NCBI RefSeq assembly: GCF_036321535.1
Contig: NC_087449.1
Location: 50,034,001-50,098,000, forward strand
Length of the DNA stretch: 64,000 nt
DNA from: Camelus dromedarius
Taxonomy: Eukaryota
Reading direction: 5' to 3'
The notes below the pieces were generated by a model that saw only the letters and a list, made by a program, of their open reading frames with translations, was not told the DNA's origin and searched no databases. This document shows, one piece after another, positions 8,751 to 62,065 of the stretch (position 1 is its first letter; every line of letters begins with the position of its first letter). The position numbers were made by a program, and so were the translations under genes.

Positions 8751-9091
8751 CCAGCTACTGAAGGTCATGACCCCAGGATGCATTCCTGTATAAGACAGTT
8801 TATAAAATTCTCAAGGTCAAGGAGTCCTTGCTTTCCTTACATCTCTTATCTCCCTTAAGAATCGCTGCAAGCATGCATGAATGAACGTGTGCCCAGTCGC
8901 TCTGCAGACAGGCAGGAGGTGATCAGGCATGTGGGGTGTGGGCAGGCTACTACGATGGGGGTCTACTTGTGGCAGATGAGGGCTTCCCCTTCTGTGGATG
9001 GCCATCTAGCTGAGACCCCGTGGGCCCCTGGAAGAGGAATTCAGTCATCCAGTAGTTAATGCATCCCGGGGTCATGACCTTCAGTAGCTGG
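8751..9091. repeat. 34-bp inverted repeat pair (8751-8784 and 9058-9091, 33/34 identical) around a 273-bp spacer
   Basis: ccagctactgaaggtcatgaccccaggatgcatt versus the reverse complement of aatgcatcccggggtcatgaccttcagtagctgg. Confidence 0.97.
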
Positions 9092-10243
9092 CCTGTAACT
9101 TAGCCTCTCCGAGCTTCCCTTTGGGCCTCAAAAGCTACTCAGGTTTCCAGAGACCCCTGAGAGAGGCAACCATCCCTGGGGGTCTCCCCCTGAGGCCTCT
9201 GTGAGCCGGTGCTCCCTCCGTGGGGACTGGGGGCAGGGTCCCAGGAGCAAGCTGTGGGTCCTGGGGGTGGGGTGCGGGGAGAGTGGAGGTAGCTGGGTTG
9301 GGGCAGGAGGGATAGAGGCAGTGACAATACTAACCGTAACTACTGCATACTGATGGTTTACCGTGTCCTGGGAGGGGGAACCTTGTCCTAAGTTCCTCAC
9401 GCGTCTTAAGTTGGTTCACGTGGCAGAGCGGGAGCTCGTGCTGTGACTATCTGTACTGTTGAGATGAGGAACCTGAGGTGCGGGGAGGTTACGTGGCAGA
9501 GCCGGAACTTTAACCCAGAGTCTGGCTCTTAATGAAGATGCACTGAAGGAGTCCAGCTGGCTTGGCGCAGCCCTTGGTCGTGCCGGCCCTCCCCGTGTAA
9601 GGGTGTAAGCTGACACCACCTCTGAGTAACTGACAGGAGGAGGCCCAGGTCACTCGGAGGGGACGGAGCTGTTCAAGGGTGTAATCTTAGTCAGGGAGGC
9701 ATTAAAATTGATCTTGGTGCAGCTCATACCAGTCTATGTGCCAGGTACATAAATCACTTGTTTACAGGGGCTGTGTGTGGCCCACGTGGTGCCCTCTGTC
9801 TTGGGGAGAGCCTGAAGCTGTATTTACCGGGGAAAGGGTGGTAAATGTATAGACAGCGCCCACTCCCCGACCCCCGTGTCTAGGTGGTTGGTCCAGAACA
9901 GGCGGAGGCAGCAGTTCACTGTTCAGCCCCGAAGTCAGCCTCCTGCTCAGGGACAGCCAGGTGGGTGTGCCAGACCCTAGGCAGCCCTGCTGGGAAAGAA
10001 AATCCAGCCTATGCGACACCCGAGCTGGTAAAGCCAAGATCGCGAGGCATCGGAGTCACAGAGGTTTGGGGTTCAGTCTTACACGGCCCCTCGCTGGCTG
10101 TGCGGCTTGTTGCCACTTCCTGTGAGTCTGTTTTCTTATTTATCAAGGAAGACTGAGCAAGAGCTCTCCTGGATTGCTGAGCGCGGGTCCCAGAAACGAC
10201 GCCCAGCAGTGTGGGGTGAGTGCGACATCTACGCACCCGCTGC

Positions 10244-11290: not shown

Positions 11291-12491
11291 CTTTCCCCAG
11301 GAGATTACTGGTACCCCAGTATTTAATGCTATTTGGTACCATCAAAAGTCCAGACTGGAGCCTGGCATGCTAATCCTTCTAGAGAGGTCTTTACAGCTTC
11401 ATTTTCCTTAATCCCACCTGCCTCCCTGACTCCCTGAGCTGCAGGCTGTGTGGGACACTCACTCTAGCTGTCTCCTCTGAATGGTGTCATCTCCCTCGCT
11501 AACCCTGGACCTGCACCCTTGACCGTGAGCCGGGGGCCGGATCCTGCTTTCCTTCTGGTCCCAGGTCCAATCACACCCCCTCCAGGAAGCCTTCCAGGAT
11601 GTCCCAGCCAAGAGACCTTCTCCTCCCCTTGAAGCCTGTGCCCCCAGCATAGACATTCCCTGTGTTTAGGCAGCATTCTCTTTCCTAGCCAGGTGTGGGC
11701 CTGACGTCAACCTTCCCCAGAGCCACGGCTCCATCCAGGTGGACAGTGAGGTCCCCATAGCCTCCAGACGAAGCTCAGGGCTATGGTTCTGAGTATACTA
11801 CACTGGGCCAGTCCTGCGCAGGCTCAGTGCCCACCCTTCTCCTCTCTGCCCTGCTCCTCTACCATGCCCTGAGCTCCTCATATGCGCTCCCATGGATGTA
11901 ACATATGCTTGGGGTCCAGTATCTATAATTCCTGCAGTCTATGCTTCTCAGGGTCTCTGGGTCTAAAACATGCCCCTTCTGGGGTTTGCAGACCCCCTGA
12001 TGCTCTGATTGTGGGAATTTGCGAGTCTGGGCTGCTCTAGTTCTGTGACTCAGGGAACCTGAGAGGGTGGGATGCTGAAGTCTACCCCCCATTTCTAAAG
12101 TATACCCTTTGGTGAGTCTGACATCCTGAGACTGAGTGTTGGCGACCAACTTGGCACCAGTCTGAGTCTAGACAGCCTGGGACACTGAATGGGCTTGGCG
12201 CTGGCCCCAGCACTCAGCAGTCGTGTGCACCTCAATGCTCTGGGCCTTGGTCTCCTCACTGATAACAGCAGGTGTCTGTGGCTCCACCAACAGCATTCAT
12301 GAGAAGCCTGCTCCATGTCCTGGTTGCCGTGGGGGGCAATGGGGAGGGGGTAGCAGGGTCATGGGTGTGAGGTCCTGCACCCAGGATGCTAGCAGTGGTC
12401 CCTGCTCCAGAGCACAGCCTTGGGCTTAGCCAGGGCTCTAGGTGGGGCCAGGGAACAATTCCTCCCCTCTAGCTGGTACTTAGGTCTAGAT

Positions 12492-16250: not shown

Positions 16251-17689
16251 CCCCTGCAGGGCCCTGGGTGGAGCCACAGGCAGATGCTCAGGTAACCACT
16301 CCCCACCGACTGTCACCTGTCCAGGCTGGTGGCTGGGGCTGACCTCTCTCCTGACTCCACTCTCTTTCCCTTCCAGAGCTCCAGGACCCCAGGACCTGCC
16401 TGTGGTGCAGGGAGATTTGCCGCCGTCCCTGCTGCCCTTCATCCTCTGATAAACAGTGTAATCAATGGTGTCATTTCTTTGGTCCTGAACTGGCAACTTC
16501 CATTTGGGGAGGAAATAATATACACTTTATATCCTTAACACAGAACATAGCATATGATAATGATGGATAATACACTCCATATTTATAGTTTTATTGAATT
16601 ATGCAAAAACCACTTTGAATAATTATACACCTACAGCACATCACATTTAATAGCTGCACATGGGGCTCCTGGCCAGCACCATGATGCAAGCTTGGGCACC
16701 AAGTGTGAAATGAAATGGCAGCCCAGCCCTGCAGCACGGGGGTTTGGCTGTCCCCTCTGCCATGCCTCCACTCAGACCTGCACCCATCTCCACTATTTCC
16801 AGTCTTCCTGGTCTTCCCAGCTCCCCAGAGAACTGGCCATGGGGGTGGGTGCAGGAGAGGGATGGGGGAGTTGACTTCCTCATTTTACAGATGGGGAAAC
16901 TGAGGCCCATTCACTCACCCATCTCTCACCCAACAGTCTCCTGAGTGCCTGCTTTGTGCCCGCCTCTGTTCTAGGCTGGGGATGAGCCCCGTGGAAAGAC
17001 CCAAAGCACGTGGGGAGAGAGCATTTCTAATCTTCCAGAATGACAACATTTATTCTTCCACTTTGCTTTGATTCATCCTCTGATTCTAATATTCAGTGAG
17101 CACAGCCTCTGGGACTGTGAAACGCCCCACCTGGGGAACAGGCCGCCCCCCACCCTCAACCTGAGCCTCCCCCAGGCTCTGAGTCATCCCTTCCCCCTCT
17201 CAAATCCCGTCCAGACCATCCCAGGCCTCTCCCTCCTCTGGGGCCCACCCCAGACTCTGGGTTTCTGGCTGTCACAAAATGTGGTCAGCTGTGACAATGA
17301 CAATTAGAAAAATTGTGCCAGGTGAGAAACTCCCACTAGATTTAGAACCCACAGTGAGTCACACCTCCAGACTCAAGGTGGCCACCAGTCTCTGCCCAGA
17401 AGGCAGCATGGCCACAGTGACCAAGTGACACTGCCCCTCTTGAGCAGTGCTGCCCACGGCACCTGGGCCCCTGCAGGGAGCCCACCCAGGCCCTGTGGGT
17501 TCCAGTATCTCCCCTTCCCTACTCTGCACCCCCTGCTCTCTCCCCTCCTGCTCGCGGGACCACATCTCACCGCTGATCTCTGGGGCCCTCCTGGGGGTGC
17601 TGCCGCATCTGATCCCAGACCCTGACGGAGGAGGCGCCATCCCTGTGAGCGGTCCTGAGCTCCAGACCCTGGTCAGAGCACAGGCTTTG

Positions 17690-18170
17690 GCCAAACCTGG
17701 TTTCCAGTCTGGGTTCTGCCACTTCCTGGCTGTGAGACTTAGGGAAAGTTGTTTAACTTCTCTGAGCTCAGTGCCCACACATGTGTGTTGAAGATAAAAA
17801 CATCTGCCTTATGTGGTGGGGACCAGACTTAGACGTGGTAACATGTGTGACGCGCTCAGTGATGGATTCTGTTATTATTACTCTTGTATCAAGCTCCTGG
17901 CACAGGGTCTGGGCACAGTCCAGGCAGACACTCAATAGAGCAGGAAGAGCAGGGACTGGGGAGCAGACTGCACAGGTTCAAGGCCCAGCTCTGCCATTTG
18001 TGAGTTGTGTGATCTTGGATGAGTTTCTAAGCCTCTCTGTGCTACAGGATCTTCATCTGTAAAATGGGGGCATAGCAGCAGTGCCTCCTTCATGGGATTG
18101 TTGAAATGATTCCTAAACTAACGCAGGTGAAGTGCTGAGCACAGGGCCTGGCACAGAGTTAGCTTTTATT
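17690..18170 (+). mobile_element. Two tandem MIRs
   Basis: ctgccacttcctggctgtgagacttagggaaagttgtttaacttctctgagc, and ctgccatttgtgagttgtgtgatcttgg...catctgtaaaatgggg. Confidence 0.8.
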
Positions 18171-20984: not shown

Positions 20985-21350
20985 CTCCCATCTGACAGAG
21001 GTAGAAACTGAGGCTCAGAAAGCTGGAGTCACTTCTTCAAGCCCATGCCGCTTGATCAGAGGCCAGATGGGGATGTGAACTCTGACCTGTCTGACCCCCC
21101 AAGTCTGTGCCCCCCTCACCCTACACCCAACTCCCCATCTCTAGTGAACTCAGCTGCTCTATGCTTCAGTTTCCTCATCTGTAAAATGGGGAGAATGGTA
21201 GTACTCTCCTTAGGTGGTCTTTTAGGATGAAATAAACTGATATATACACCACACACATACATGCACACAAATACACAGCACCTAGCTTAGTGCCTGGCAC
21301 ATAGTCAGCCCCCAGCCTGTGATAGCTAGAATGCTTAGTAATTATTATCA
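20985..21350. mobile_element. Two MIR fragments in opposite orientation
   Basis: gaaactgaggctcagaaagctggagtcac (minus) and tcagtttcctcatctgtaaaatgggg...gtgcctggcacatagt (plus). Confidence 0.8.
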
Positions 21351-21769: not shown

Positions 21770-22860
21770 CAGGGTACACAAAATTAAAACCACGATTAGA
21801 CATACACTTTAGGGAAAATGCAGAGCACCAAGAAAAGAGAAAAATCTGTAAAAAGTAGCTGGGGAGAAGACAGATGCTTCCCAGGGAATGAGAACAGGCA
21901 GCAGAGTCTCCCCAGCAACAGCAGAGGACAGAAAGCCACGGGATAAAATGTTTTTAGTGCCCAATGAAACAAGCAAAGTAAAATTCTAGACCCAGCCTAA
22001 GTTATCACTCAGAATGGAATGAGGAAGAAATACATTTTCAGGCAATGAGACACTTGCAAGCCCTTTTAAAAGAACTGATTTAAAAAATCACTCAGGAAGG
22101 AGGCCATTGAGCCTAGAAAGAAAGAGAGGAGCAAGCCAGCAATAGGGAGCAGAAAAAAAAAAAAGGGTAAATTTGGGGCGGATCATAGTAAGTCAGTGTA
22201 GCCCCCTTGGCCATCCTGATCACAACCAGCGCGGGGACACCGAGGAGGCGGGACCACGGTCCAGAACGCACAACACTGAAGTGGAAAGGATGTCAGAGGA
22301 AACATATTCTGGGTCTTTGTGCTGCTCAGAGCTAGGGGAGGGATATCGATCTACTTTAGACTGTGTTCAGTCAAGTGTGCTTATTATGATTTTTAAGGCC
22401 AAATTAAAAAAGAGAATGGAATATGGAATTTCCAAACCAGTAGATGGGAAAGAGGAAATAAACAGAATCTGGTCAATATGAATGGGGAGGGGNNNNNNNN
22501 NNNNNNNNNNNNNNNNNNNNNNNNNNNNNNNNNNNNNNNNNNNNNNNNNNNNNNNNNNNNNNNNNNNNNNNNNNNNNNNNNNNNNNNNNNNNNNNNNNNN
22601 NNNNNNNNNNNNNNNNNNNNNNNNNNNNNNNNNNNNNNNNNNNNNNNNNNNNNNNNNNNNNNNNNNNNNNNNNNNNNNNNNNNNNNNNNNNNNNNNNNNN
22701 NNNNNNNNNNNNNNNNNNNNNNNNNNNNNNNNNNNNNNNNNNNNNNNNNNNNNNNNNNNNNNNNNNNNNNNNNNNNNNNNNNNNNNNNNNNNNNNNNNNN
22801 NNNNNNNNNNNNNNNNNNGGAAACAGAAAAATCCTTGCAATTAAAAGCACAAAGTATAAG
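21770..22860 (+). mobile_element. Very old L1 ORF1 3' half / HAL1-like fragment, interrupted by the assembly gap
   Basis: A-rich text aaattctagacccagcctaagttatca...gaaatacattttcagg, typical of the ORF1 C-terminal region. Confidence 0.6.
22493..22818. other. Assembly gap (326 N)
   Basis: Run of N. Confidence 1.
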
Positions 22861-27401: not shown

Positions 27402-27490
27402 TTTTTTTTTTAACAGAAGTACTGGGGATTGAACCCAGGACCTCATGCCTACTAAGTATGCGTTCTACCACTGAGCGATACATGCTCCCC
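27402..27490 (-). mobile_element. Camelid tRNA-Ala-derived SINE (vic-1 type)
   Basis: T-tail followed by gaagtactggggattgaacccaggacctcatgcctactaagtatgcgttctaccactgagcgatac; no clean TSD. Confidence 0.9.
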
Positions 27491-31139: not shown

Positions 31140-31440
31140 AGGAATAAAAGATTTGCACTTGATGTGCATGGAATCAAGAGCATACAGACAAGAACCAAGA
31201 AAACAGATAAAGAATATAATATTTCTAATAGTGGTAGGTGTGGTGCTATGAAGAAAATAAAGCAGGACTGGCTAACTGCTTTAGGTTGGGATCCAGGAAA
31301 GCCTCCTGGAGGAGGTGACATTTAAGCTGAGACCTGGATCTCACAGACCAGACAACAGGCTTTGGGTGGGATGACTTGCCTGAGACCTTGCAGGTGGTGA
31401 TCCTAGTGGAGCAGGTTTGGAGGTCACAGGAAATGTGTAT
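31140..31440 (-). mobile_element. L2 fragment
   Basis: gtgctatgaagaaaataaagcagg...gaaagcctcctggaggaggtgacatttaagctgagacctgga. Confidence 0.85.
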
Positions 31441-31929: not shown

Positions 31930-34230
31930 TGGAAGAGTCAGATCAGCTTCCAATTCATGACTTTTTCTGGGAACCTATCAAAGAGCTGAGGTCAGGGAGC
32001 AAACAAGCTGCCCCAAATCTGAAGAGACAGGCGCTGCAGGGAGAAAGGAGATGGAGTCACCCCCTTGCCTGGGGTAGGTGCAACCAGTCACAGGTAAGAA
32101 GTGTTGAGCTAGAATAATTAAGAAGTTGGTGAAGACTGAATGAGGCTGACTGGACAGTTTGAAGCCCACAGAACTTCGGGAGTCTGCACCAACTTGCTGG
32201 CTTTCTCTGGGGATGCTCACAGAAAGGGTCAGATAGAGTCCTAAGCAAATGCCCATTGTGGCTTGGACAAGAATGGGTTGGAAAAAATTCTGCCCAGATC
32301 TTTCTCTTCGGTCTTTCCTATGAAACAAAAAACTTAATCTAAGTGGAAAATTGGGTGAGAACAGCTGCCCTTAAGGGGGAGGGGCAGGAATACTCATTGG
32401 GCCCAGAACTACCTGGGGGGAGGGGCAGGGAAATAAAAAGGCCTCACCCTGAAAAGCAAGGAAACAGGGTCTAAGACTGAGGCTTAATCAGAACAACAGA
32501 AAATACACCCCCAGATTTCCCTACTGCCAAGATAACAAGCTTGCTTGACTAGTAAGACCTGAAAAATAAGGCAGATGAGCAGAAGCAGAGAAGAATGCTT
32601 AAAGAAACTCTCTCTGGGGCCCAAAGCAAAGGGAAGGCCTAAAACACAGGTTCAAATAGACGTGGCTCTGGAAAACCATTCTCTACCCTAAACACAAGGT
32701 TGCAAGGCAGGAATTTGCAGCCTGTGGTGCACTGAGGGTAACCATGGCAACAGCAAATCTCTAACCCAGTCCAGCTCCTCCCTGGGTTAACTCAAATCCC
32801 ATCACTAAAGGCCTAGCAGAAGGAAAAGTGTGCCCATTTTCAGGCATAAAAATAATTTTTCTCAGTCTCTTCTGTCTAAGCCAAGAAGTTCAGCTTTAAA
32901 TAAAAAAATCATGAGGGATGTAAGATACAAAGTAATCATTGGAACCAGATGACACTGATGATAGGACTGACAGGGAATTTTAAATAGCTGTGATTAATAA
33001 ACGTATTAATCGTAATAAGGACAATAGGAAAGATCAGATGGGTAATTTCAGCAAAAACTGTAAGAAAAAATCAAATGGAAGTGGTTGAAATAAAAAATAC
33101 AGTAGCATAAATGAAGCATGCCTCCCATAGGCTCCTTGGCAGACTTGGAACAGCTAAGGAAAGCATCAAGGAACATGAAGACAGGTCAGTAGAAATTACC
33201 CAACAGAAACACAAAGGGGAAAAAGAGTAGGAGGAAAAAACCAGAGTATAATACCTAAGAGCATGGGACAGAATCAAACAGCCTAATATATATGTAATTG
33301 GAATTGCAGGAGGAAAAGAGAGAATGAGGCAGAAAAAGTATTTCAAGAAATAATCACCAAGAATTTCCTCAAACTAATGATAGACAAACCCCCCAGGTAT
33401 CCAAGAAGTTCAGAGACCATTAAGCAGAATAAATGACACTCCGCTCCGCCTCCCCACACACACAACCTTAGGCATATATTATTTAAACAATTGGAGAAAA
33501 ATTTGCAATCAGAACATCTTGAAGGTAGAGAAAAGAAAAAATATGCCGAGAGAAACAGAGAAAAGGATTACAGCAGACTTCTAATCAGAACCCATGCAAA
33601 CCAGAAGATAATACAGTAACATTTTTGAAGTATTGAAAAGGAAAAAAACACCCTGTCAATCCAGAATTCTGTACCAGAATAAATATGTTTCAAAAATAAA
33701 GGAGAAAGAAAAACTTTATCAAACAAAAATTGACAAAATCCATTGTCAGATCTACTCTAAAAGAAATGCTAGAGAAAGTTCTTCAAACAGAAAGAACATG
33801 ATATCAAATAAAATCTTGGATCTATACAGATAAAGAGTGCTCGCAATGTAATAAGTAAAAGTAAAATAAAATGCTTTTTTCCTTATTTTTAATTGCTCTT
33901 AAAGGTTAAATGACTCTTTAAAGCCAAAATATGTTTATAGAATTTTTAAAAATATAACGTCTGACCATAATAACACAAAGGATGTAAGGGAGAAATAAAA
34001 TAATACTGTTTAAGTTCCTTATACTATACATGAAGAGGTGTCACATTATTTGAAGGTAGACTAATTAAGGATGTACATTGTAAATCCTAAGGAAACCACT
34101 AAAATATAATATATAAATATGTAATGTGCATACTAAGCTAACAGATGAGCTAAAATGGAATACTAAATGATTAACTCAAGAGAAAGCATAAAAAGAGGTA
34201 AAAAAGAACAGGTGGAATAAACATAACACT
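31930..34230 (+). mobile_element. Old L1 (L1MC/MD/ME-type): 5' UTR, decayed ORF1 and inter-ORF region; ORF2 absent
   Basis: ORF1 text at about 33000-33830 (gaacatgaagacaggtcagtagaaattacc; ccagaattctgtacc), then inter-ORF sequence. Confidence 0.85.
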
Positions 34231-38310: not shown

Positions 38311-38799
38311 CTGCTTCCAGAAAGGTCTCTAATGGATGAGAATCTCCTGCCCTGCCTCCAGGCCCACAGAGGAGTGGAGAGTCGAGATGGCAGTTTAGTT
38401 TCTTCCCTCCCTACTGCCCAAGCACCTGGGAAATGACTGATGTTCACCTTGAAGGGGGCGGTGGAACAGGCAGGCTGTTCACCAGCATAGTTATGGCCTT
38501 TAGGGATTAGATACACCTTCCGGGGTGAGATTTCAGAAGCTGACTTGTGGGATGATGAGTTCTCAATCATTGTCTTTTGACTTCACAATGAACCTGAACT
38601 GCAGTTCTGAAGACTTCAAAACCCAGGTGTGAATTCTGTGCCAGTGCCCCCTGCAGAGCAGCCCAGCCAGAGTTCTCATCTTCTGCTGGTCTGAGTCTAA
38701 AGCCCTCTCCTCTAACAATAGGCTGCTGAGCACTTGGTAATGGTCAGATTTCTTGGAATTGATCTTCTCATATAGGACATACTTGGGAGAAATAAAATA

Positions 38800-38829
38800 A
38801 CCATCAAAGAAACTTAAATGAATTACACT
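38800..38829 (+). repeat. Copy 1 of a dispersed 30-bp TCF/homeodomain composite
   Basis: accatcaaagaaacttaaatgaattacact; 28/30 identical to 43887-43916. Confidence 0.9.
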
Positions 38830-39844
38830 TTCACCAGGAGAAAAACAGCAATCCACCTGAAGCAGGAACTACAAGGAAAATAAGAGTCTGTTGTGTACAG
38901 AGACCAGGAGGGTGAGGAGAGGGACCCCATGTCTCTGAATTCATTGCATCTTGGATCACTTTCTCTGTTGTATGAGGCTGTACATCCCTACTCTGTTTCG
39001 CACCCCAGCTGCCCCCACAGGGAAGGGGGGTGTCTGAGTCACTCTCCTACCCTCTCTGGGGGGTGATTGCTTTGTCTTAGAGAGGAGGAGGGGTCTCAAT
39101 CTTTCCTCAACCTTTTCCCTCCACCCTGCCATCTTCTGTCTCCTCTCTCACAGCCCCATCAGCTGAGGAATGAGCCTCAGAGACACTGAGCAAAACAGGA
39201 GTGGAGCTTTTACCAAAGTGGGAGGCAGACAGGGGCTCCTGGGTAGCAGGAAAGGGCCATAGTGATGGAATGAATGACCAGGTTGCAGAACGAGGAGTAG
39301 ATCCGGATGGCTTCAGCTGGCAACCAGGCCCAGGGTTCCCTTCTGACAGTGGGCTACACAGTGAATTCCAGAGCCTGGCAGGAGCTGGATGCAGGCTTCT
39401 CAAATACCTCCTGCTCTGGGTGGAGCTGACACAGGCCTGAGCCTGGCCCAGAGAGAGAAGAGCCCCAATTGTGGAACTTTCCCCAGGGGCTGGTTAGTTA
39501 AATCCACATAAACTCAATCTCACTTCAGGGAAGAGAGGTGTGGCTGTGCCAGTTTTCAGAGAAGGCAGCGGGAGGTGACCTCTGGAATGAGTGTAGAGGA
39601 GGAGGAGTGGCGGGGGAGGGGAGGCCGACACTCCAGGGCTTCTGGGACTTGGCCTTGCCTGCCCTGGGGTCTCATGCAGGTGTGGTGCTGATCCAGGAAG
39701 GCTGGGTGGCAGAGGCTGTTGGAGCTCTCTTGTCCAGGCACTTAGTTAAGAAACATGTATTGAGGTCCTACTATGAGCTGAGTGCCAGGGAAACACGACC
39801 CCGACCTCGCTGAGCTTAAAAGAAATTGAATGTATAAAATTTCT

Positions 39845-39990
39845 AGTGTATAGATGGGAAAACTGAGTTCCAAAGAAGGTAAATATTATTCATTACTTAC
39901 AGGTTAGGGAACTGGCATTCAGAGGGGCTGGATAAGTCTAGTAAGTGGCAAAGCCAGATGCAAAGTGAAGTGATCTGCCCTGGGCCTGCA
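39845..39990 (-). mobile_element. MIR fragment
   Basis: tagatgggaaaactgagttccaaagaaggtaaat...tagtaagtggcaaagccagatgcaaa. Confidence 0.65.
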
Positions 39991-40539
39991 CACCTGCCCT
40001 GAGCTCTGCTGTCACACGGGCAGCTGTGCACCCTACGGCCCACCCATGAGCTGCTCTAGGGAAACATTCAGTGAAATGAGGTTCTCCCTGGCCTCTTCCT
40101 TAGGGGTGGGCTGGGACAGCCCAGGCTGTGCTCAGTTTTCTGGGGCTGGCCTTATAGGTGGGGCCACAAAGCCAGGGCCAGGGGACAATTCTACTCAGAG
40201 ATCCAGAGCAGGGCATGGTGCTTAAGCTGGAGGACTATTTCCAGGTACAGTCCAGGAGGAAGTGGGGCCTGGACACCTGAGCAGTGGGGAGACCAAATCC
40301 CTGATTAAGGCAGAGGGGCTGGAGATGGACCATCCAAGGGAGACAGGACCCAGGTTAGGCCTGGCAGCTCCAGGCAACATCCCAGGAGGGCCTCCCAAGA
40401 GATGCCCCATGAGCCTGCAGTGTCCCCTGCTGCTCATCTCTTTAGGCCTGGCAGAGCCCAGAATGAGCTGGAGCTGGCTGCATCTCAAGGACCACCTTGC
40501 TTGTGGATCACCATGGCCTTGACCCCAACATTCTCTAGC

Positions 40540-40870
40540 TGTTGTTGCCATCTTATCACCTCTGTGATACCAGCCCAACGACAGGCACAATCTTCTGATG
40601 ACCAAGTGTTTTATACAAAATCTTACTATGATGAAAGAGTGAAGTCCTCTCATACATATTGGCTGGAAGTTTCTGGGAAGCTTTCCAGGAGGAGGTGAGC
40701 CTTGGGTCCACCCTTGATTTCAGGCTTGGAGAAGAAGATGGTGAAGAAAGGATGTTCCAGACCATGGTGTGTCACATGCAAAATCTAAAATCTGTGCAGA
40801 AGGGAGGGAGGAGACTACTCTCAAAAGGCCAAACTGTGGGATGGTCCAGGGTAGGATGTGAGAGTCCAGT
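40540..40870 (-). mobile_element. L2 fragment
   Basis: gggaagctttccaggaggaggtgagccttggg. Confidence 0.55.
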
Positions 40871-41059
40871 CTGAGTGAAATATTCAGAAAGCTATTAACT
40901 TAGGCTCAAGGAGGAGGAGAAATCAGCATTTATTGAGCACCTTTTCTGTTGCATATATATGTCCTCAATTAGCCATTTCACCTTCAAAATTCTCCTGAAG
41001 GGCATTGGGGTCGGCTGGTTGCATTTCTCCTTTCTGCAACAGGGCTAAGTTTGGTTTGG

Positions 41060-41491
41060 GGGTACCCTCTTCCTCACTCTCAATCCATAAGTGAAGCCAC
41101 ACCCATAGCTCAGGGGTGAGCCCTGAGACCTAAGCTTAAAGCAGTCCATGTGGCATGTTCCTCTGGTCTTGATAATTGGCACAGGGATGTGACTCAGCCA
41201 GAGCCAATTAGATGCAATGAGAACTTTGCTGAGGCTTCTGAAAAGGAACTCTTGCAGTTCTTTGCCACCAACTTGAACCCGGAACTTTCTTGTCCAGAGT
41301 TGTTGCCAGTACTTCACACGTAACCTAAGAATGAGGCCTTGGTGACACCTCTGGGGGACCCCATTAAGCCATGACGGGGATCATTCTTATCCCTGAACGT
41401 TTCCTTATGAGCAATGACTTCCTTTTTTGCTGACCATAGTTTGGATTGAGATTTCTGACAGTTGCAATAGAAAAGAACCGTAACTGTTACA
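41060..41491 (+). mobile_element. MLT1K/L-like LTR
   Basis: cagggatgtgactcagccagagccaattagatgc...gtttggattgagatttctgacagttgcaatagaaaagaaccgtaactgttaca. Confidence 0.75.
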
Positions 41492-41529
41492 CAAATCCAT
41501 GCAAGAAACTCAAGTAGAAAGAAGGGTTA

Positions 41530-41810
41530 TGATAAGGAGACCCAGTATTCCTTTGCACATCTTCTTTTTCACCTCTTCAGACTGGCTTCTCTGCTCGACT
41601 CACCACAGCCACACAAAATCGTAGCCTCTATCTCTGAGCTGCAATATTACCCAGGATGAGTTTTCAGTTACTTGATTTTGTCCATCCTACACTAAAAATT
41701 CTCAAGAAGAAAATCAGATTTGCCCAGCGAGTGAGGTGTCCGCACCTGTCCTATTAATAAGCAATAGGGGCGGGGCTTAGCAGGATTTTGGGCAGAGCAA
41801 GTGGTGATGT
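41530..41810 (-). mobile_element. MLT1J-like LTR fragment
   Basis: aaattctcaagaagaaaatcagatttgcccagcgagtgaggtgtcc. Confidence 0.6.
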
Positions 41811-42714
41811 GCAGGAAGAATAACTATCATTTCTAAGCAAATTTGAATCACAGTTCCTGTTTTCCAAATGAGGAAACTAACGCTCAAAGTAACCTGACTT
41901 GCCCAAGATCACACAGTTGGTAAATTACAAAATCCCCAGATTCACATCTTGTTTTGCTGCACTCCACACTCCATGGTATTTCCACGCTTCCAGCCCCACA
42001 AGTTTTTCATTGGCTTCCTTCCATTTCCTCCTCCCATTTGCCCAATTCCTGCCCACTGACCAGGGTAAAAAGTACGAAAGCAGACTCCCCTGAGAAGAGA
42101 GGTGACAACCAGGCCTGCCACGAGGAGTGGATGCCTTTCTTGACCACCTGAGCACTGAGGGCATCTGTCGTTTCCCACCAGAAGCAGGCACGGCTTCTTT
42201 TCCAGAGACAGACCTGGCCATCTGGAGGCTCCAATCCCACACTCAATTATTCAACACAAATAAGAGCTGAATTAACGTCTCATGGCCACATTGCTTTTTA
42301 CCCAAATAGCTACCTGATTGTGAACACATTTGCCTGAGTCCAGCAGTCCCACTGCTGAGATCTTCATCAGAAGCCTTTCAACCCCCAGAAATCAGTTCTG
42401 ATAACAAGCCCTCTTGTGATTGTTGCAAAATCCAAAGTGGGGGAGGCCCCCTGCAGACACAGTGCTCCAGTGACTGTGGTTAAACAAGGACCTCTAGGGA
42501 GCAAGGCTGGGGCATTTGTTGGCCACGTGGTCCTGGCCTCCTGTTCCAGGAGATGATCAATGACATTTGCTCAGCAGGATTCATGGGATGATTCCAGGTA
42601 AACAGTGGCCAAAAAGGGTTTAGAAAGGGGACTGAAGTGCGGGCTGTAACTGGAGGTTGCTGAAAGCCACATCTCCACAGACGGGGGTGGTGGGAGGGAG
42701 TTGGTGTATGTGCA

Positions 42715-42900
42715 TCCCCTTCAGGATGTCTCAGTGTCAAGTGGGCGACCTTGGGGTGACCTGTCAGGTCCTCGGTTTCCCCACCTGGGAAACAGAGCTC
42801 ATGAACCCTCCTTCACAAGCAGTAGTGAAGGTCACAGGGGAGGGGTTGGGGAAAGCTCTCAGCATGATGCCTGGTACACAGTAGGTGCTCAGATAAGAAA
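42715..42900 (+). mobile_element. MIR
   Basis: gaccttggggtgacc...ctcggtttccccacctggga...gcctggtacacagtaggtgctca. Confidence 0.75.
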
Positions 42901-43886
42901 GTGACCATTGACTTGAGTTGGGTCCAAAGATGACTTGCTGAGCTGGATAGAGGGGGTGATGGGGAACCCTGGCTTCCAGCCCTCGCCTTTCCCATCCATT
43001 ATCATCTGAGGAGGCTTTGGGTACCACTGGGCTGCAGGAGGGTGGGTCTACATCAGGTAGACTGGATGTGGAGCAGTGAGGATCTGGACAAGTTCTCCCG
43101 TCAAGATAGGCAGGAAGGCCCAGCCAGAGGGGATGGAAAACAAGACTCAGCATTTAGAAAGAATAGGGGCAGGTGAGAAATGGCCGGAAAGGTCAGTCCA
43201 GGCCTCCCAGCAACAGAACAGATGGAGAGATCTCTACCCACCATGGAGGCAGGCAGTAGGTGGGGAGGAGAGTTCCTGGCTAGGGCTGAAGAAGGAGAAG
43301 ATCTGAGAAAAGAAGCAGTGCCTGAGCTCAGAGCTCAGCTCAGAACAAGGCCCCAGACCCTGGGCTGTTCTCAGGGCCCATCAGATCCCCATGACACTTG
43401 TTGTAGTAGCTGCTATGAAGGAAGAGTGGAGAGGACTTGGGAATAACTGGGGATGCTCAGTGTGGTGAGGTCTCAGAGACACTTCCAGGCATGCCGTGAA
43501 GGCACTGCCTAGGACTATAGACAATCACAAGGGAGAGAAGGAGAAAGAGATGGTGGGGTCTGGGCAGGACAGAGCTGACCCTTGGGGAACACCATGGTAG
43601 AGGTGAAGTCAGGATACTGGATTCTGGGCCCGACTCTGCTCTAGATCATTGTGTGAGCCAGAACAAGTCACTTGCCTTTTCTCAGCTTGCATATGCACAT
43701 CTGTAAAATGAGAGGCATTAGCCATGGGGTCTGTAAGACTCCTCTCAGCTCAGAGGGTCACGCCTTGACAGTTTTGGGTTCTGTGTGATATCTCCATCCT
43801 ATCTCCATATTCCAATTCTCTGCCTTAAGTCTGACCAGTGGTTCCCCAGCTCAAATCCACCTTCTGCCAGTGGAAAGCAAGTCAGC

Positions 43887-43916
43887 ACCATCAAAGAGCC
43901 TTAAATGAATTACACT
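43887..43916 (+). repeat. Copy 2 of the dispersed 30-bp TCF/homeodomain composite
   Basis: accatcaaagagccttaaatgaattacact, immediately followed by the MARE/AP-1-like TGAGTCAGCA (43916-43925). Confidence 0.9.
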
Positions 43917-44184
43917 GAGTCAGCAGCCCTCACGGTTGCTGCATAATGTGGGTCTGGCAATGACAGGACTGCTCAGTTCATTAGAGTCCAGGGTAATGTG
44001 CTCTTGCCCTTGGAGATGCCATTATGGGCTGGTTTCTGCAGTTTCTTCTTTGGGAGGGAAGAAAATGGAAAGAAGGGTAAGCAGGAGATGAACCTGGCTC
44101 TCAGCCTTGGGGGAGAGGCTGACAGCAAAGTTTTGTGCTGAAATCTCAGCTTGGAGACTTAGATGCTGGAAGGGAGGCAGCCAT

Positions 44185-45554: not shown

Positions 45555-46810
45555 TAAGTTTACATCTCAGGCTGATCCCTGGCACAGAGACAGCCTACAA
45601 AAATCAATCAAACCAGCAAATGCTGCAGAAGTTAAGGAGAGGGGAGCAGTGCAGAATCTGATTTCTATAGTTACCATACTATAAGATCCAAATGGCTAGT
45701 TTTCAACAGCAATAAAAATCACAAAGCATACCAAGAAACAGTAAAGTATGGCCCATTCAAAGGAGAAAAATTAACAGAAGTTATTCTTGAGAAAGACCAG
45801 ATGGCAGGTTTACAAGACAAAGACTTTTAAACAACTGTCTTAGAGATAGGCAAATAACTAAAGGCAAATGTGGGGACTGTCAAGAAAACTGTGTGACAGA
45901 ATGGAAATATCAATAAAGAAGTAGAAAACATAAAAATAAATCAAAAAGAAATTCTGGAGCTGAAAAGTATAGTAACTGAAATGAAAATTTCACTGGAGGG
46001 ATTCCAAAGCAAATTTGAACAGGTGTAAGAAAGAATCAGTGAATATGAAGACAGGAAAATGGGAATTATCAAGTCTGAGGAACAGAAAGAAAAAGATTTT
46101 GAAAAAGTGAACAGAGCCTCAGGGATCTGTGAGGCACCATCAAATGAACCAGCATAACACTATGGGAGTATGATTGTAACTTTGGTTTGTAACTTTACTT
46201 TTTGTTTGTGCATAATTTAAGAAATTAATGCATTAAAATCATTAATTTATGTTTTTGGACACACAATATATAAAGATATAATTCTGTAACATTAGTAACT
46301 GAGAGGGAATGGGATAAAACTGTAAGGAGCAGAGTTTTTGTATGTTTTTGAAGTTAGCTGATATAAATTCAAATTAGAGTGTTATAAATTTAGGATGGTA
46401 ACTGTAGTCCCCATAGTAACCATAAAGAAAATTACTATAGAATATACACAAAAGGAAATGAGAAGAATTAAAATATTTTGCTACAAAAAAATCAATTATA
46501 CACAAAAGAAGACTGCAAAGCAGGAAATGAGGAACAATAAGGATAAGACATAAAGAATATAAATAGCAAGAATTAAGTTCCTTCTTATCAGTAATTACTT
46601 TAAATGTAAATACATTAAATTTTTCGTCAAAATATAGAGATTAATAGAATAGATTAAAATACGTGAGCCACTATATACTATCTACAGGAGACATCTCAGA
46701 TCCAAAGACGAAAATAGGTTGAAAGTGGAAGAATATATTCCAAGGAAATAGTAAACCAGAAAAGAGCATCACGGTTATACTAGTAGCAGACTTTAAGTCA
46801 AAACAGACTT
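45555..46810 (+). mobile_element. Old L1 (L1MB/L1M4-like): ORF1 5' half, internal deletion, inter-ORF region and start of ORF2
   Basis: gtatggcccattcaaaggag...gactttttaaacaactgtc...aaaaagaaattctggagctgaaaagta, then tatctacaggagacatctcagatccaaagac. Confidence 0.85.
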
Positions 46811-50535: not shown

Positions 50536-51332
50536 ATTCTCAGGGCTCAGTCCTCAGTCTAGAATGACCAAACCATGGACCATGGGTATGGCTCTTGTAC
50601 AAAGTTCTGTAGCTCCTGAGAGTCTGCCCCAGAGGAAAGTCTATGTACCTACTTAGAGTAAAGAGAAGATGGATGGTAGCCAGATCCTTTCTAGAAGTTA
50701 CTCTTTCTAGAAATCGTGTTTTCCCCCTTTTAATGTTTTAATTAAGAAATGAAAAGTTTTTAATGGTGTCTTGAATGTGGTAAGAGAGTTGTGACTGGAT
50801 ATCACCAATGTCAAGAGAAGGATTAGAATCCAGCCCTCCCAGAAGGGTCTTCATCTAGCAGACAGAGCCTCCACTGAAGGGGAGATTAGCCTCCCCACAG
50901 GTAACCACAAGATACAGTGCCCTGCATCAGCGTGGGGTCCCAGACCACTCATAAAAGTGACAGCCCCTGCCTTTATGGATGAGGACAGCAGAAATGGGGC
51001 CCTGCATTGCCCACAGAACAGGGGGGCAGAGAAACCCTCTGGGCAGACCCTGTGTGTCCTGAAATTTCCTACTTGTAGTGATTAAAAAAATTGATCAAAG
51101 TCATATCTGAGGCTGAGCAGGGAGCCATCCCTCATCTAAGCAATTCCTAAGATACCTCCACATTTTAATAGTGAGTGTCTTAGATGAAAGGAAGTAGAGA
51201 GAGAATCAGGGAAAGCTTAACATTTTACATTTTTCTTCTTTGCTGTTGAGTTTTTTTTCCCAGCAAATATATATTGCCTTAATAATGTGTGTGTGATTTA
51301 TATACATGTGTGTGTACTAACGTGTGCTTGTC

Positions 51333-51337
<5 letters not shown>

Positions 51338-51367
<30 letters not shown>
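51338..51367. repeat. (GT)15 microsatellite
   Basis: Directly visible. Confidence 0.98.
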
Positions 51368-51370
<3 letters not shown>

Positions 51371-55059: not shown

Positions 55060-58000
55060 TTTCTACTTATGGCCAAGATGGAATAATAGGAGCTGGATTT
55101 ATCCTTCTACCCCAAACAATTTAAAAATTGGATAGAATATATAAAATAACAATTTTTCAGTCATTAGGCATTAAGCAAAGAAGACATAGTTATCTCTGAA
55201 AGATGGGAAATAAAAACGCTAGCCCCATAAATATTTCAGGGTAAAAATTTTTTTATTTCTTGTTTGCTTTTGAAATATAGTCTTGAGGGTTTAGAATTTT
55301 AAGCTAAGAGGGCTTTTTCCCCCTTAACATTTTAAGATGTTTCTCCACTGTTTTCTCACTTGAATTGTTTCCGAGGAGAAACCTGCTGTCATCCTTATTT
55401 TTATTTCTCTGTACATAATCTGTCTTTATTTTTCATCTGGCTACTTTTAAGGATTTCTCTCTTTTTTTTCTTTCTCTCTCTCTTTTTAAAAATTACTTGT
55501 CTTTATGAAGTATAGTCAGCTAAAATGTGTCAATTTCTGGTGTACATAAGACTTTCTCTTTATCATTAGCTTTGAGCACTTTGATTACGATGTGACTTGG
55601 TGTAGGTATTTTTAATTTTTTATTTTTTTGGTACGTATGTGCATGTTTCTGGGATTTGTAGAGCTTCTTAGACTTGTGAGTTTATACTTTTCATCAACTT
55701 TGGAAAATTTTGCCCATTGTTTTTTTCAATTTTTTTCCCTGTCCTGAAAGAATTAATCACCAGGAGATTCACACCACAAGAAATGTTAAACAAAGCCTTT
55801 AAGTCAGAAAAGAAATATTACTGGAGGGAAATATGAATCTCACAAAGGAAAGAAGCACACTGGAAGTAGTGGTTATACAGGGTAATATAAAATAGTTTCT
55901 GTTGTTATTTAAATCTCTCAAAAAATCATTTACCATTTGAAGACTGATAACAACAATGTAGAGTTATGTTTATAACATACATAAAAGTAAAATGTATGAC
56001 CACAATAGCAAAAAGGCCAAGAGGAGAGACAAGGAAGCATGCAATTACAGAGTTTTTATATTATATGTGAAGTGTTATAAACTATCACTTGAAAGTACAT
56101 GGTGATAAGTTAAGTATATATAGTATAAATCCCAAAGCATTCACTAAAACATGTTATACGTAATAAACCAACAAAAATACATAATGAATTAAAAATACTC
56201 AATTATTCAAAAAGAAAGGAGAAAAAAGTGAACAAAGAACAGATGTGACAAATAGAAAACAAAGAGCAAGGTCATGTATAAAAATTAACTGTATTAACAA
56301 TCATGTTAAATGTAAATGGTTTAAACACCCACATTAAATGTGGAGATTGTCAGATTAGATAAAAAAACCAAGACTGAACTACATGCTACTCACAGGAGAA
56401 TATTCCACTTTATTAAGACACAAATAAATTAAAAGTAAAAGAATGTCAAGTTAAGAATAATCAATAAAAAGCTGGAGTGACTCTATATTAGTGTCAAAGT
56501 AAATGTCAGAGCAAAGAATACTACCAAGGATAAAAAGAGTCATTTCATAGTGGTAAAGGGGTCAGTTCATCAAGAGAAAATAAGAGTTCTAAACACTTAT
56601 GCACCTGAAAGCAGAGTTTCAAAATAATGAAGCAAAAATAAATAGAACTGCAAAGAGAAATAAGCAAATACATAATTACAGAGGCAGATTTCAATATCGC
56701 TCTCAGAGTAATTGATAGAATAAGTAGACAGAATGTAAATAAGAATATAGAAGTTTTTACAACACTATCAAACAATGTGGTCTCATTGACATTTATAAAA
56801 CTCTCTACTCAATAATGACAGGATACATATTATTTTCCACTACACATGGAACATTTACTAAGATAGTTTACATAATCCAAGTCTCAATAATTTAAAAGAA
56901 TCCTAATTGTACAAAGTATATTGTCTGTTCATAATTTAAAAAAATAGAACTCAGTAGCAGAAAGACACTTGGAAAATCTCCCCAATATTTGGAAACTAAG
57001 TAATACACCTCCGAACCACTCATGTTTAAAGGCTGAATCAAAGGAGAAATAAAAAATATTTTGAATTGAATGAAAATGAAAACATATATCAAAATTTATG
57101 ACATGCCACTAAAGCAGTACTTAGGGAGGAATTCATAGCACTAAACACCTATATTATAAACTGAGAAAGATCCAAAATCAATGACAGCAACTTTCACCTC
57201 AAGAAGTTGGAAGAACAAATTAAGCCCAAAATACACAGAAGAAAGGAGATGATAAAAAAAAATCAGATCAGAAATTAACAAAATAGAAAACATAAAAACA
57301 ATAGAGAAATGAAAATAAAATCTGATTATTTGAGAAGATCAATAAGATAATAAATATGTATTTGGAGCGATTCAAAAAAAAGAGGGAAGATATAAATCAC
57401 CAGTATCATGAATGAGAGAAGGGACATCACCACCAATTCTACAGACATTTGAAGAATAATATATAAGGAAATAATATGAACAACTTTATGTAAATGAACT
57501 TGAAAACTTAAAAAGATAAATTCATTTAAAGAAACAAATTACCAAAGATAACACAAGAGGAAATTGATGGCCAACATAGTTCTATGTCCATTAAAGAAAC
57601 CGAATGATTGAACTTGCAGTTATAAACCTCCCACTAAGAAATGTCAAGACCTGGGTGGCTTATCTGTAGAATTCCACCAAATATTTAAGGATGAAATAAT
57701 ACCAGCTCTACACAAAATCTTCCATACAACTGAAGAGAAGGGACTACTTTCTAACTCATTCTATGAGCCTAGCATTACCCTGATATTAAAACTATGCAAA
57801 GACATTATGAGAAAAGAAAAAACTACAGACCAGTACTCCTCATGAACATAGGTGTAAGGCTTTTAAACAAAATTTTAGTAAATAGAATCCAAATATATAA
57901 GACAAAAAGTATGTTATGGTCAAGTGTGGGTTTCTTTTTTCTCCTTTTTAGAATGCAAGGCTTCACATTAAAAAAATCAATCAGTGTTGTTCATGATATT

Positions 58001-58895
58001 GAAGAACAACATGATCATTGCAATAGATGCAGTAAAACCATTTCACAAAATCCAAGATTCACTCGTGATAAATTAGGAATGGAAAGTGAACCTCTATCTT
58101 GATAAAGAGCATTTACAAAATATCTACCATGAGCACCACACTTAATGATGAAAGACTGAAGGCTTTTCCCTTTGAGATAAGGAACAAGGTAAGGACTCAT
58201 TGTCACTATTCCTATTCAATGGTGTAGTGGAGGTTCTAGCCAACGCAACTGAGCAGGAAAAAGAAATGAAAGGCATCCACATTATAAAGAAAGAAGTAAA
58301 TCTGTCATTATTCACAGATGACATGATCATCTATGTTAGACATTCTATGACATCTATTAAAAAAACTAACTGAAAAGTGAATTTTTAAGCAAGATACAAA
58401 GTTAATATACAAAAATCAATTACATTTCTATATACTGGCAATGAAAAATTGGAAATTAAAATTAAAAAATCAGTATCATTTACAACAGCAGAAAAATATA
58501 AGATCATTAGGGATAAATCTGACAAAAGGTGTGCAGAACCTGTACACCGAAAATTATAAAGCATTTCTGAAAGAAATTTAAAACAACCTAGATAGATGGA
58601 AAGATACACTGTGTTCATGGGTTGGAAGACCTATTATTGTTAAGATATTGATTCTCCTTAAGTTGACCTATAGATTCTACATAATTCCAATAATCCCAGT
58701 AGTGTTTTTCAGAAATTGTCAAGTTGATTTTAAAATGTATTTGAAAATGCAGAGTAGTCAAAACAGCATTAAAAAAGATCAAAGTTGGAACACTAACATT
58801 ACACGACTTCAAGACTTAGAATAAAGCTCCAATAATGAAGGCAGCATTGTGTTGTGGTATTGGTATCAAGATAAACAAATACATCAATGGAAGAT
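55060..58895 (+). mobile_element. Old L1 (L1MD/ME-like): 5' end, inverted ORF1 segment (about 55234-55749), then ORF1 end and about 2.5 kb of decayed ORF2; no 3' UTR
   Basis: 5' end tggccaagatggaataatagg; ORF2 text with endonuclease-region aacacttatgcacc, ctcattctatgagcctagcattaccctgat, and ttattcacagatgacatgat (the FADDM-equivalent RT motif). Frames are broken by many stops. Confidence 0.9.
55461..55546 (-). mobile_element. Short, severely 5'-truncated younger L1 3' end nested in the old L1
   Basis: T/CT-rich tail followed by ttatgaagtatagtcagctaaaatgtgtcaatttctggtgtaca. The TSD is taaggatttctct (55448-55460) / taagactttctct (55547-55559), 11/13. Confidence 0.7.
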
Positions 58896-59799: not shown

Positions 59800-60020
59800 A
59801 GCGGTGCAGTAAACTCTGGATCCAGGCTGTGGCCACCTAGATCTTGGCTCTGCCACCTACTAGGTTAGTCACCTAACCTCTCTGAACCTCAGTTTCCTCT
59901 TCTATAAAATGAGAATTATAATAGTATCTACATCATAGTGTTGTTGCGGAGATGAATGAGTTAGTGCATGTAAAATATTGAGAAAGGTGCCTGGTATGTG
60001 GTAAGTTCTCAGTAATGTGC
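59800..60020 (+). mobile_element. MIR, near full length
   Basis: ggctctgccacctactagg...acctctctgaacctcagtttcctcttctataaaatgag...gcatgtaaaat...gtgcctgg. Confidence 0.88.
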
Positions 60021-61919: not shown

Positions 61920-62065
61920 NNNNNNNNNNNNNNNNNNNNNNNNNNNNNNNNNNNNNNNNNNNNNNNNNNNNNNNNNNNNNNNNNNNNNNNNNNNNNNNNN
62001 NNNNNNNNNNNNNNNNNNNNNNNNNNNNNNNNNNNNNNNNNNNNNNNNNNNNNNNNNNNNNNNNN
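61920..62065. other. Assembly gap (146 N)
   Basis: Run of N. Confidence 1.

What the first reader, a model, noticed from the sequence alone, without database searches (positions are those of the whole stretch)
38800..43925. Isolated 30-bp TCF plus homeodomain composite occurs twice, 5.1 kb apart, 28/30 identical
Seen: accatcaaagaAActtaaatgaattacact (38800-38829) and accatcaaagaGCcttaaatgaattacact (43887-43916), in the same orientation, with unrelated flanks and no recognisable repeat. The only two mismatches fall in the spacer between the TCF/LEF site (CATCAAAG) and the homeodomain/POU-like block (TTAAATGAATTA). My rough uniform-composition estimate of a chance match this good in 64 kb is about 1e-5; AT bias would raise it. 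Inference: either a tiny duplication preserved by selection, or a fixed-spacing Wnt-effector/homeodomain cooperative element, possibly an undescribed composite motif. Copy 2 runs straight into TGAGTCAGCA (MARE/AP-1). Partial echoes occur at 24237 (ccatcaaagaaa) and 53111 (atgaattac).
Basis: partly seen in the sequence, partly recalled or inferred. Interest (0 to 1): 0.72.

Follow-up and report, generated by a model that had tools for sequence, protein, structure and literature searches.

The report
Tiny repair-made DNA duplication, not enhancer code
A 30-letter stretch of camel non-coding DNA really does occur twice 5.1 kb apart, but it looks like an ordinary small copy pasted in when a DNA break was repaired, not a special gene switch.

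Summary
The two 30-mers sit at 38800-38829 and 43887-43916 on the + strand and match at 28/30. The two mismatches are adjacent, and these are the only two copies in the window. The flanks are at random identity (20/90 and 15/90). There is no 5.1-kb duplication diagonal, repeat family, RNA fold, coding exon or CpG island.

A match this good is unlikely by chance in one window: 1.7e-5 under uniform composition, about 1-2e-4 under an order-3 Markov null.

Copy 2 looks like an insertion. It is bracketed by a direct 7-mer, AGTCAGC (43880-43886 and 43918-43924), with one extra G at 43917. Such a bracket occurs at 0.12% of window positions. This fits repair-mediated duplication (Pace et al. 2009, PMC2671141). 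In that class most donors lie within 5 kb, and 4-21-nt target duplications and 1-68-nt filler are described breakpoint marks.

The ten positions outside the proposed TCF and homeodomain cores match as well (8/10) as the cores. That argues against long-term selection on two binding sites.

Conservation in other species could not be tested. My odds: repair duplication about 0.62, chance about 0.17, selected composite about 0.05.

The parts
38800..38829 (+). Copy 1 of the 30-mer, the putative donor (template) of the duplication
   Evidence: It has no tight flanking direct repeat.
43887..43916 (+). Copy 2 of the 30-mer, the putative acceptor (inserted copy); 28/30 to copy 1
43917..43917 (+). Single extra G between the insert and the right target copy (filler base, or a later substitution)
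   Evidence: Read directly.
43880..43886 (+). Left copy of the 7-nt direct repeat AGTCAGC abutting copy 2 (an 8-mer if the first A of the 30-mer is counted)
   Evidence: Only 6 occurrences on the + strand of the window, and two of them bracket copy 2.
43918..43924 (+). Right copy of the 7-nt direct repeat AGTCAGC (target-site-duplication-like)
   Evidence: A flanking repeat of 7 nt or more with offsets of at most 1 occurs at 0.12% of window positions.
43916..43925 (+). It is a junction product: last base of the insert, the filler G, the right target copy and the next base.
   Evidence: Without the insert the site would read AAGTCAGCA, which has no TGAGTCA heptamer.
38786..38843 (+). GGAGAAA 7-mers at symmetric 7-nt offsets on both sides of copy 1 (38786-38792 and 38837-38843); unexplained, probably chance
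   Evidence: About 3.5% expected for any 7-mer within 10-nt offsets. The word is common: 18 + 15 occurrences.
43610..43790 (+). Old MIR-type SINE about 100 bp upstream of copy 2 (context only; it does not include the 30-mer)
   Evidence: Read. It shows weak homology to other MIR copies in the window (17977-18073 against 43622-43718).

Best explanation
The pair is a small repair-mediated duplication. A DNA break at about 43886/43887 was repaired by copying roughly 30 nt from a template 5.09 kb upstream on the same strand (copy 1). This left a 31-nt insert (30 copied bases plus one filler G) bracketed by a 7-nt duplication of the target, AGTCAGC.

The adjacent AA/GC difference is either one later dinucleotide change or a copying error. 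The element is most likely neutral. The binding-site look-alikes were carried along by the copy, and the AP-1-like site was created at the junction.

Shown: the match, its sharp borders, the bracket repeat, and the absence of poly-A or repeat-family signs. Inferred: the direction (copy 1 to copy 2), the repair mechanism, and neutrality.
For: - **Sharp borders.** Identity is 28/30 inside and random directly outside (20/90 and 15/90; flank local scores at shuffle level). That is what a copied patch looks like. A decayed repeat or an old duplication would fade gradually.
- **Insertion hallmark at copy 2.** A direct 7-mer, AGTCAGC, abuts it on the left and follows it after one base on the right. 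Such a bracket is found at 0.12% of window positions. The word occurs only 6 times on the + strand of the window.
- **No poly-A or poly-T** at either edge of copy 2.
- **Fit to a described class.** Pace et al. 2009 (PMC2671141) report 824 of 1,136 human duplicons with the donor within 5 kb. Breakpoints carry microhomology, filler of 1-68 nt and target duplications of 4-21 nt (6 of 39 proximal events), and never poly-A.
- **Prior rate.** Cow density in that study is 0.20 per Mb of repeat DNA for events of 50 bp or more. If density is the same outside repeats, that is about 0.013 per 64 kb, roughly 50 times the chance rate of a 28/30 pair (about 1-2e-4).
- **Similar scar nearby.** The same window holds a second short isolated near-perfect repeat, an inverted one (8745-8785 against 9057-9097).
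Against: - No outgroup or population data could be laid, so the 'empty site' has not been seen.
- I noticed the 7-mer bracket after looking for insertion marks, so its p-value (about 0.002 for either copy) is post hoc.
- Microhomology between donor and acceptor flanks is at most 1 nt, whereas most published events show 2-9 nt.
- At about 30 nt the insert is below the 50-bp floor of the published set. At 5,087 bp the donor is just beyond the 5-kb cut-off the authors set to define the proximal class.
- The genome-wide copy number of the 30-mer is unknown.
Confidence: 0.62

Rival explanations
1. Pure coincidence: two unrelated AT-rich stretches happen to agree at 28 of 30 positions. The scan noticed the pair because it reads very many windows.
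For: - Sharp borders and random flanks are also what a chance maximal match looks like.
- Outside MIR, L1 and low-complexity DNA the window's pair statistics follow the Markov null: about 4 pairs at 24/30, as simulated.
- At about 1-2e-4 per window, tens of such pairs are expected over about 250,000 scanned windows (window count from the tool description).
Against: - The per-window expectation is 1.7e-5 to 2e-4. That gives 0.01-0.1 over the 547 windows of this genome that carry notes.
- The published density of repair-made duplications is some 50-fold higher.
- Chance does not predict the 7-mer bracket round copy 2 (0.12% of positions).
Confidence: 0.17
2. Both copies are fragments of a third sequence: a low-copy or unrecognised interspersed repeat, a captured RNA or an organelle piece. 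On this reading neither copy is the other's template.
For: - Copy 1 also has a 7-mer (GGAGAAA) on both sides at symmetric 7-nt offsets. It could therefore be a 44-nt insert itself.
- Copy 1 gives slightly better than random gapped matches to AT-rich L1-like DNA in the window (top score 30, against a 95th percentile of 28 for shuffled queries).
Against: - There is no third copy in 64 kb (best 22/30).
- Homology does not extend past the 30 nt in either direction.
- Copy 2 gives only null-level matches to the L1-like DNA. The longer alignments came from permissive scoring and were not significant window-wide.
- There is no tRNA or Rfam match.
- The GGAGAAA bracket has p about 0.035 and the word is common.
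Confidence: 0.1
3. One reading: a functional fixed-spacing TCF/LEF plus homeodomain/POU composite site kept in two copies by selection.
For: - The TCF core 8-mer and an AT-rich homeodomain-like block are present 4 nt apart. Short spacing is typical of cooperative pairs (PMC12119339).
- The 8-mer is somewhat over-represented in the window (9 against 2.2 expected).
- Repair-made duplications are known to copy predicted binding sites (21 cases in PMC2671141), so a copied site could be reused.
Against: - Non-motif positions match as well as motif positions (8/10; p about 4e-4 if they were free to drift like the flanks).
- The surroundings show no CpG island, coding exon or RNA signal. Small RNA-seq runs labelled with the same species (organism A) hold next to none of the stretch's words.
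- No TCF-homeodomain composite appears in the main text of the CAP-SELEX survey.
- The neighbouring AP-1-like site is a junction by-product.
- Motif look-alikes of 8-12 nt are common in AT-rich DNA.
Confidence: 0.05
4. The two 30-mers are themselves the target-site duplication of a 5.06-kb inserted element, or relics of a 5.1-kb tandem duplication.
For: They are in direct orientation at the two ends of a 5,057-bp segment.
Against: - There is no poly-A or poly-T at either inner edge.
- There are no LTR-like internal repeats.
- No transposon protein domains turn up in ORFs of 87 aa or more in the interior.
- The interior contains an old MIR.
- There is no excess of shared 8-mers on the diagonal near 5,087 (z between -0.7 and 0.5).
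Confidence: 0.02

Closest known systems
Repair-mediated duplications (capture of proximal chromosomal DNA at double-strand breaks by synthesis-dependent strand annealing; Pace, Sen, Batzer and Feschotte 2009, PMC2671141)
   Same: A single nearby donor on the same chromosome (5.09 kb); sharp borders; no poly-A; a target duplication within the reported 4-21-nt range; filler within the reported 1-68-nt range; non-coding setting. Known from cow, dog, mouse and primates.
   Different: The insert is about 30 nt, below the 50-bp detection floor of that study (mean 162 bp). The donor lies just past the 5-kb cut-off the authors set. Microhomology is at most 1 nt. The empty site has not been observed.
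Templated insertions of microhomology-mediated break-induced replication or polymerase-theta end joining (for example Osia et al. 2021, PMC8421209)
   Same: A short insert (10 nt to read length) copied from a template in cis, found as germline variants.
   Different: Here the copy is direct and 5 kb away.
Composite transcription-factor motifs from CAP-SELEX (Xie et al. 2025, PMC12119339)
   Same: Two recognisable core words separated by a short gap (under 5 bp is typical there).
   Different: No TCF/LEF-homeodomain pair is described in that paper's main text. A composite motif is defined by recurrence and binding data. Here there are two copies, identical also at non-motif positions, which indicates copying and not convergence.

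Membership tests
Repair-mediated duplication (RD) | The acceptor is an insertion relative to an ancestral empty site | not testable with these tools
No mammalian genome collection is available. An ORF-based anchor search found nothing.
Repair-mediated duplication (RD) | One donor elsewhere, usually within a few kb on the same chromosome | tested here: met
   There are exactly two copies in 64 kb, 5,087 bp apart, on the same strand. Genome-wide uniqueness was not testable.
Repair-mediated duplication (RD) | Breakpoint marks of break repair (microhomology, filler, deletion or target duplication) and no poly-A/T tail | tested here: met
   A 7-nt direct repeat AGTCAGC brackets copy 2, with 1 filler base and no poly-A/T. 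Microhomology is only 1 nt.
Repair-mediated duplication (RD) | Homology ends abruptly at the insert borders | tested here: met
   Flank identity is 22% and 17%, and gapped flank scores are at shuffle level.
Cooperative TF composite motif | Sequence constraint concentrated on the two core motifs, with freer spacer and flanks | tested here: not met
   8 of 10 non-core positions are identical, against 20 of 20 core positions. The pattern is uniform, as in a block copy.
Cooperative TF composite motif | Recurrence across the genome, cross-species conservation, and binding data | not testable with these tools
   No mammalian alignments or chromatin data are available.
Interspersed repeat (UCON/MER/Eulor/AmnSINE or other TE) | Homology to other family members that extends beyond a short core and decays gradually | tested here: not met
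   Nothing extends past the 30 nt. There is no third copy in the window. No repeat library was available, so annotation as an ancient repeat was not checked.
Tandem or segmental duplication with a 5.1-kb period | Excess of shared words along the diagonal at that offset | tested here: not met
   8-mer diagonal counts near 5,087 are at background, z -0.7 to 0.5.
Small structured RNA gene | Stable fold or a covariance-model match | tested here: not met
   Fold z-scores run from -1.1 to 0.1 on both strands. There is no Rfam hit at the sites and no tRNA-like structure.

The most novel reading that the evidence does not exclude
The 30-nt block is a working regulatory module (TCF/LEF plus POU/homeodomain). 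Break repair copied it to a second place 5 kb away, and the junction added a new AP-1/NF-E2-type site. That would be a caught-in-the-act example of enhancer grammar spreading by repair-mediated micro-duplication.
Probability: 0.05. Interest if true: 0.45.

Novelty: new member of a known kind. Interest (0 to 1): 0.12.

Why it matters
It matters little in itself. It is one more small, probably neutral scar of DNA break repair in camel non-coding DNA.

It is useful as a caution for the scan. Isolated near-identical 25-40-nt pairs within a few kb are expected from repair-mediated duplication at roughly one per hundred 64-kb windows. They will always contain some transcription-factor look-alikes. 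The informative checks are the border sharpness, a bracket repeat or filler at one copy, and whether non-motif positions are as identical as motif positions.

Tried and rejected
1. **Laying reads.** One ORF overlapping the place was left out of the Pfam batch. Later work on those letters was local computation on the window only.
2. **Run look-ups.** DNA runs of two species labels hold 98-99% of the words. Random-primed 'RNA?' libraries hold 9-21%. Small RNA-seq runs hold about none. This says nothing firm about expression or about presence of the insert.
3. **Gene anchor for fetching orthologous loci.**
   - A Pfam scan of 149 ORFs of 87 aa or more gave only one sub-threshold reverse-transcriptase hit and a sub-threshold PLOD GT hit at 40555-40665.
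   - The PLOD hit had E = 0.00097, 18.8 bits against a cut-off of 27, and no PDB match. I judged it spurious.
   - A codon-usage scan and the longest ORFs look non-coding.
   - A homologue search with the ORF at 40225-40719 found nothing.
4. **5.1-kb tandem duplication:** rejected.
5. **The 30-mers as target duplications of a 5-kb element:** rejected. There is no poly-A, no LTRs and no TE proteins.
6. **Terminal inverted repeat of a DNA transposon:** no inverted partner.
7. **L1 or other repeat origin.** The L1 'WIKDLN'-like resemblance rests on my memory of the L1 sequence only. The alignment to (-)3200-3460 scored 55 (p 0.006 for that one pair). Window-wide scans with that scoring give null maxima of 51-70, and a comparable alignment for copy 2 was plainly spurious. 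Not accepted.
8. **tRNA 3' half ending in CCA, or a mitochondrial tRNA:** ARAGORN found nothing credible.
9. **C/D-box-like words at 38551-38610:** no Rfam support.
10. **Earlier scan notes:** nothing related beyond the inverted repeat in this window.
Full report
**Observation**

The window is non-coding DNA of a camelid; the species identity comes from other agents' notes on this genome. They agree at 28 of 30 positions. The two differences are adjacent (AA against GC at positions 12-13). No further copy with up to 3 mismatches exists on either strand. The best third site is 22/30, inside AT-rich L1-like DNA.

A global alignment of 430 nt around each copy shows nothing outside the 30 nt. Ungapped identity of the 90 nt on each side is 20/90 and 15/90. 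Gapped local scores of 300-nt flanks are at shuffle level (p 0.45 and 0.67). A sensitive self-blastn of the window finds the pair as the only hit touching either site.

**Is it more than chance?**

I scored every pair of 30-nt windows in the real sequence and in three order-3 Markov simulations. The simulations gave these numbers of pair clusters:

| Matches out of 30 | Clusters per simulation |
|---|---|
| 21 | 849-917 |
| 22 | 152-190 |
| 23 | 21-29 |
| 24 | 2-6 |
| 25 | 0-1 |

This extrapolates to about 1-2e-4 at 28/30. In the real window nearly all pairs at 24-26/30 are MIR, L1-like or low-complexity DNA. The few that remain match the null count, so the null is fair for unique DNA.

blastn with +1/-1 scoring gives E = 0.005. 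The pair is therefore improbable for one window and for the 547 noted windows of this genome (0.01-0.1 expected). It is not extraordinary for a scan of some 250,000 windows.

**Context**

- Rfam at gathering thresholds finds only two tRNA-derived SINE heads far away.
- No kilobase of the window reaches a CpG observed/expected ratio above 0.43, and 31-46 kb sits at 0.03-0.25.
- 149 ORFs of 87 aa or more gave only one sub-threshold reverse-transcriptase hit and one sub-threshold PLOD hit. The PLOD hit finds nothing in the PDB.
- Codon-usage scoring and the longest ORFs look non-coding.
- RNA-seq runs labelled with the same species (organism A) hold next to none of the stretch's words.
- Folding of 110 nt around each copy gives z-scores between -1.1 and 0.1 on both strands.
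- Shared 8-mers on diagonals near 5,087 are at background, so there is no hidden 5.1-kb tandem duplication.
- The inner edges of the 5,057-bp interval carry no poly-A or poly-T. The interval has no LTR-like repeats or transposon proteins, and it contains an old MIR. The 30-mers are therefore not the target duplication of an inserted element.

**The telling detail**

Copy 2 is bracketed by a direct 7-mer. AGTCAGC at 43880-43886 abuts its first base. AGTCAGC at 43918-43924 follows its last base after a single G at 43917. If the first A of the 30-mer is counted, the repeat is 8 nt.

Over all window positions, a flanking repeat of 7 nt or more with offsets of at most 1 is found at 0.12%. The word occurs only 6 times on the + strand. 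This is the anatomy of an insertion with a target-site duplication and one filler base.

That decamer (43916-43925) is the last base of the insert, the filler G and the duplicated target. Without the insert the site would read AAGTCAGCA and would have no AP-1 heptamer.

Copy 1 has a weaker, probably accidental feature. GGAGAAA sits at symmetric 7-nt offsets on both sides (38786-38792 and 38837-38843). The chance of some such 7-mer within 10-nt offsets is about 3.5%, and the word is common.

**Mechanism**

The anatomy fits repair-mediated duplication as described by Pace et al. 2009 (PMC2671141). A double-strand break is repaired by copying a short stretch from a nearby template.

- In human, 824 of 1,136 such duplicons have the donor within 5 kb and 58 lie farther away on the same chromosome.
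- None of the proximal events has a poly-A tail.
- Their breakpoints show microhomology (2-9 nt), filler (1-68 nt), deletions and, in 6 of 39 inspected cases, target duplications of 4-21 nt.
- Cow has 0.20 events of 50 bp or more per Mb of repeat DNA. If density is the same outside repeats, that is about 0.013 per 64 kb, some 50 times the chance rate of a 28/30 pair.
- Shorter events were below that study's detection floor.

I therefore read copy 1 as the template and copy 2 as the copy. The AA/GC difference is either one later dinucleotide change or a copying error. The direction, the pathway and neutrality are inferences. The match, the borders and the bracket are shown.

**Why not a selected composite motif?**

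If the pair were an old duplication whose flanks have decayed to random while two binding sites were kept, the ten positions outside the proposed cores should have drifted too. These are two bases before the TCF word, four between the words and four after the AT-rich block. They match at 8/10 (p about 4e-4 at 25% background).

Identity is uniform across the block, which means block copying. Convergence on 28 of 30 bases is not credible for degenerate binding sites.

The core 8-mer is mildly over-represented in the window (9 against 2.2 expected). AP-1 heptamers are at 15 against 8, which is unremarkable. The main text of the CAP-SELEX survey of 2025 does not mention LEF1, TCF7L or HMG factors. 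That leaves the idea untested, not supported. Pace et al. did note that repair duplications can copy predicted binding sites, so reuse of the copy is possible but unsupported here.

**Rivals**

- **Pure chance (0.17).** It explains the sharp borders but not the bracket, and its prior is much lower than that of repair duplication.
- **A third source or unrecognised repeat (0.10).** This is kept alive by the GGAGAAA bracket at copy 1 and by slightly better than random gapped matches of copy 1 to AT-rich L1-like DNA (top score 30 against a shuffled 95th percentile of 28). However, copy 2 gives only null scores, and the longer alignments came from permissive scoring. No tRNA-like or Rfam structure exists.
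- **Selected composite (0.05).** See the section above.
- **The 30-mers as target duplication of a 5-kb element, or a 5.1-kb tandem relic (0.02).** See Context.

Work on them was local computation on the window, and external calls were placed beside them.

As a result, three things remain untested: conservation in other species, presence or absence in other camelids, and genome-wide copy number. The N runs at 22493-22818 and 61920-62065 were left untouched.

**Verdict**

'Tiny duplication' is supported. 'Kept by selection' and 'new composite motif' are not. This is an ordinary, small member of a known class of repair scars, and interest is low.

Noticed in passing
window 8745-8785 and 9057-9097: A near-perfect inverted repeat of 38-41 nt (94.7% identity) about 270 bp apart. 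It is a second short isolated duplicate in the same window, possibly another template-switch or repair scar. It is already noted by the scan as s1-188327.
   Followed up: partly
window 3046-3128 and 27403-27485: Two copies of a tRNA-derived SINE head, 83.5% identical over 79 nt. Rfam tRNA scores are 43.4 and 34.2 bits on the minus strand.
   Followed up: partly
window 1111-2784 and 56872-58527: Two old AT-rich LINE-like fragments in opposite orientation (62% identity over 1.7 kb). Further related pieces lie at 33054-33246, 45894-46805 and 56048-56513. One ORF in the window gives a weak reverse-transcriptase hit (E = 0.005).
   Followed up: partly
window 40555-40665 (+): A 37-aa stretch of an ORF gives a sub-threshold Pfam hit to the PLOD glycosyltransferase domain (E = 0.00097, 18.8 bits against a cut-off of 27). 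It has no match to solved structures. It is probably spurious, or conceivably a very decayed pseudo-exon.
   Followed up: partly
window 38786-38792 and 38837-38843: GGAGAAA sits on both sides of copy 1 at the same 7-nt distance. If real, copy 1 would itself be a 44-nt insert with a 7-nt target duplication, and both copies would come from a third source. The chance level is about 3.5%.
   Followed up: partly
window 4849-4927 and 51329-51370: (CA)n and (TG)n microsatellites. They dominate the raw list of near-identical 30-nt pairs.
   Followed up: no
window 7277-7306, 31297-31326 and 11569-11598 (-): Three copies of a GC-rich 30-nt block (26/30 and 24/30). It is probably part of an old interspersed repeat and was not identified.
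   Followed up: no
window 38551-38610 (+): C-box-like (GATGATGA) and D-box-like (CTGA) words about 55 nt apart, upstream of copy 1. There is no terminal stem and no Rfam support (best E = 0.53, to an unrelated family).
   Followed up: yes
whole window: There is no CpG island and no convincing coding exon in 64 kb. MIR-type SINE fragments are very frequent (for example 8329-8398, 16876-16909, 21126-21211, 43610-43790 and 59866-59974).
   Followed up: partly
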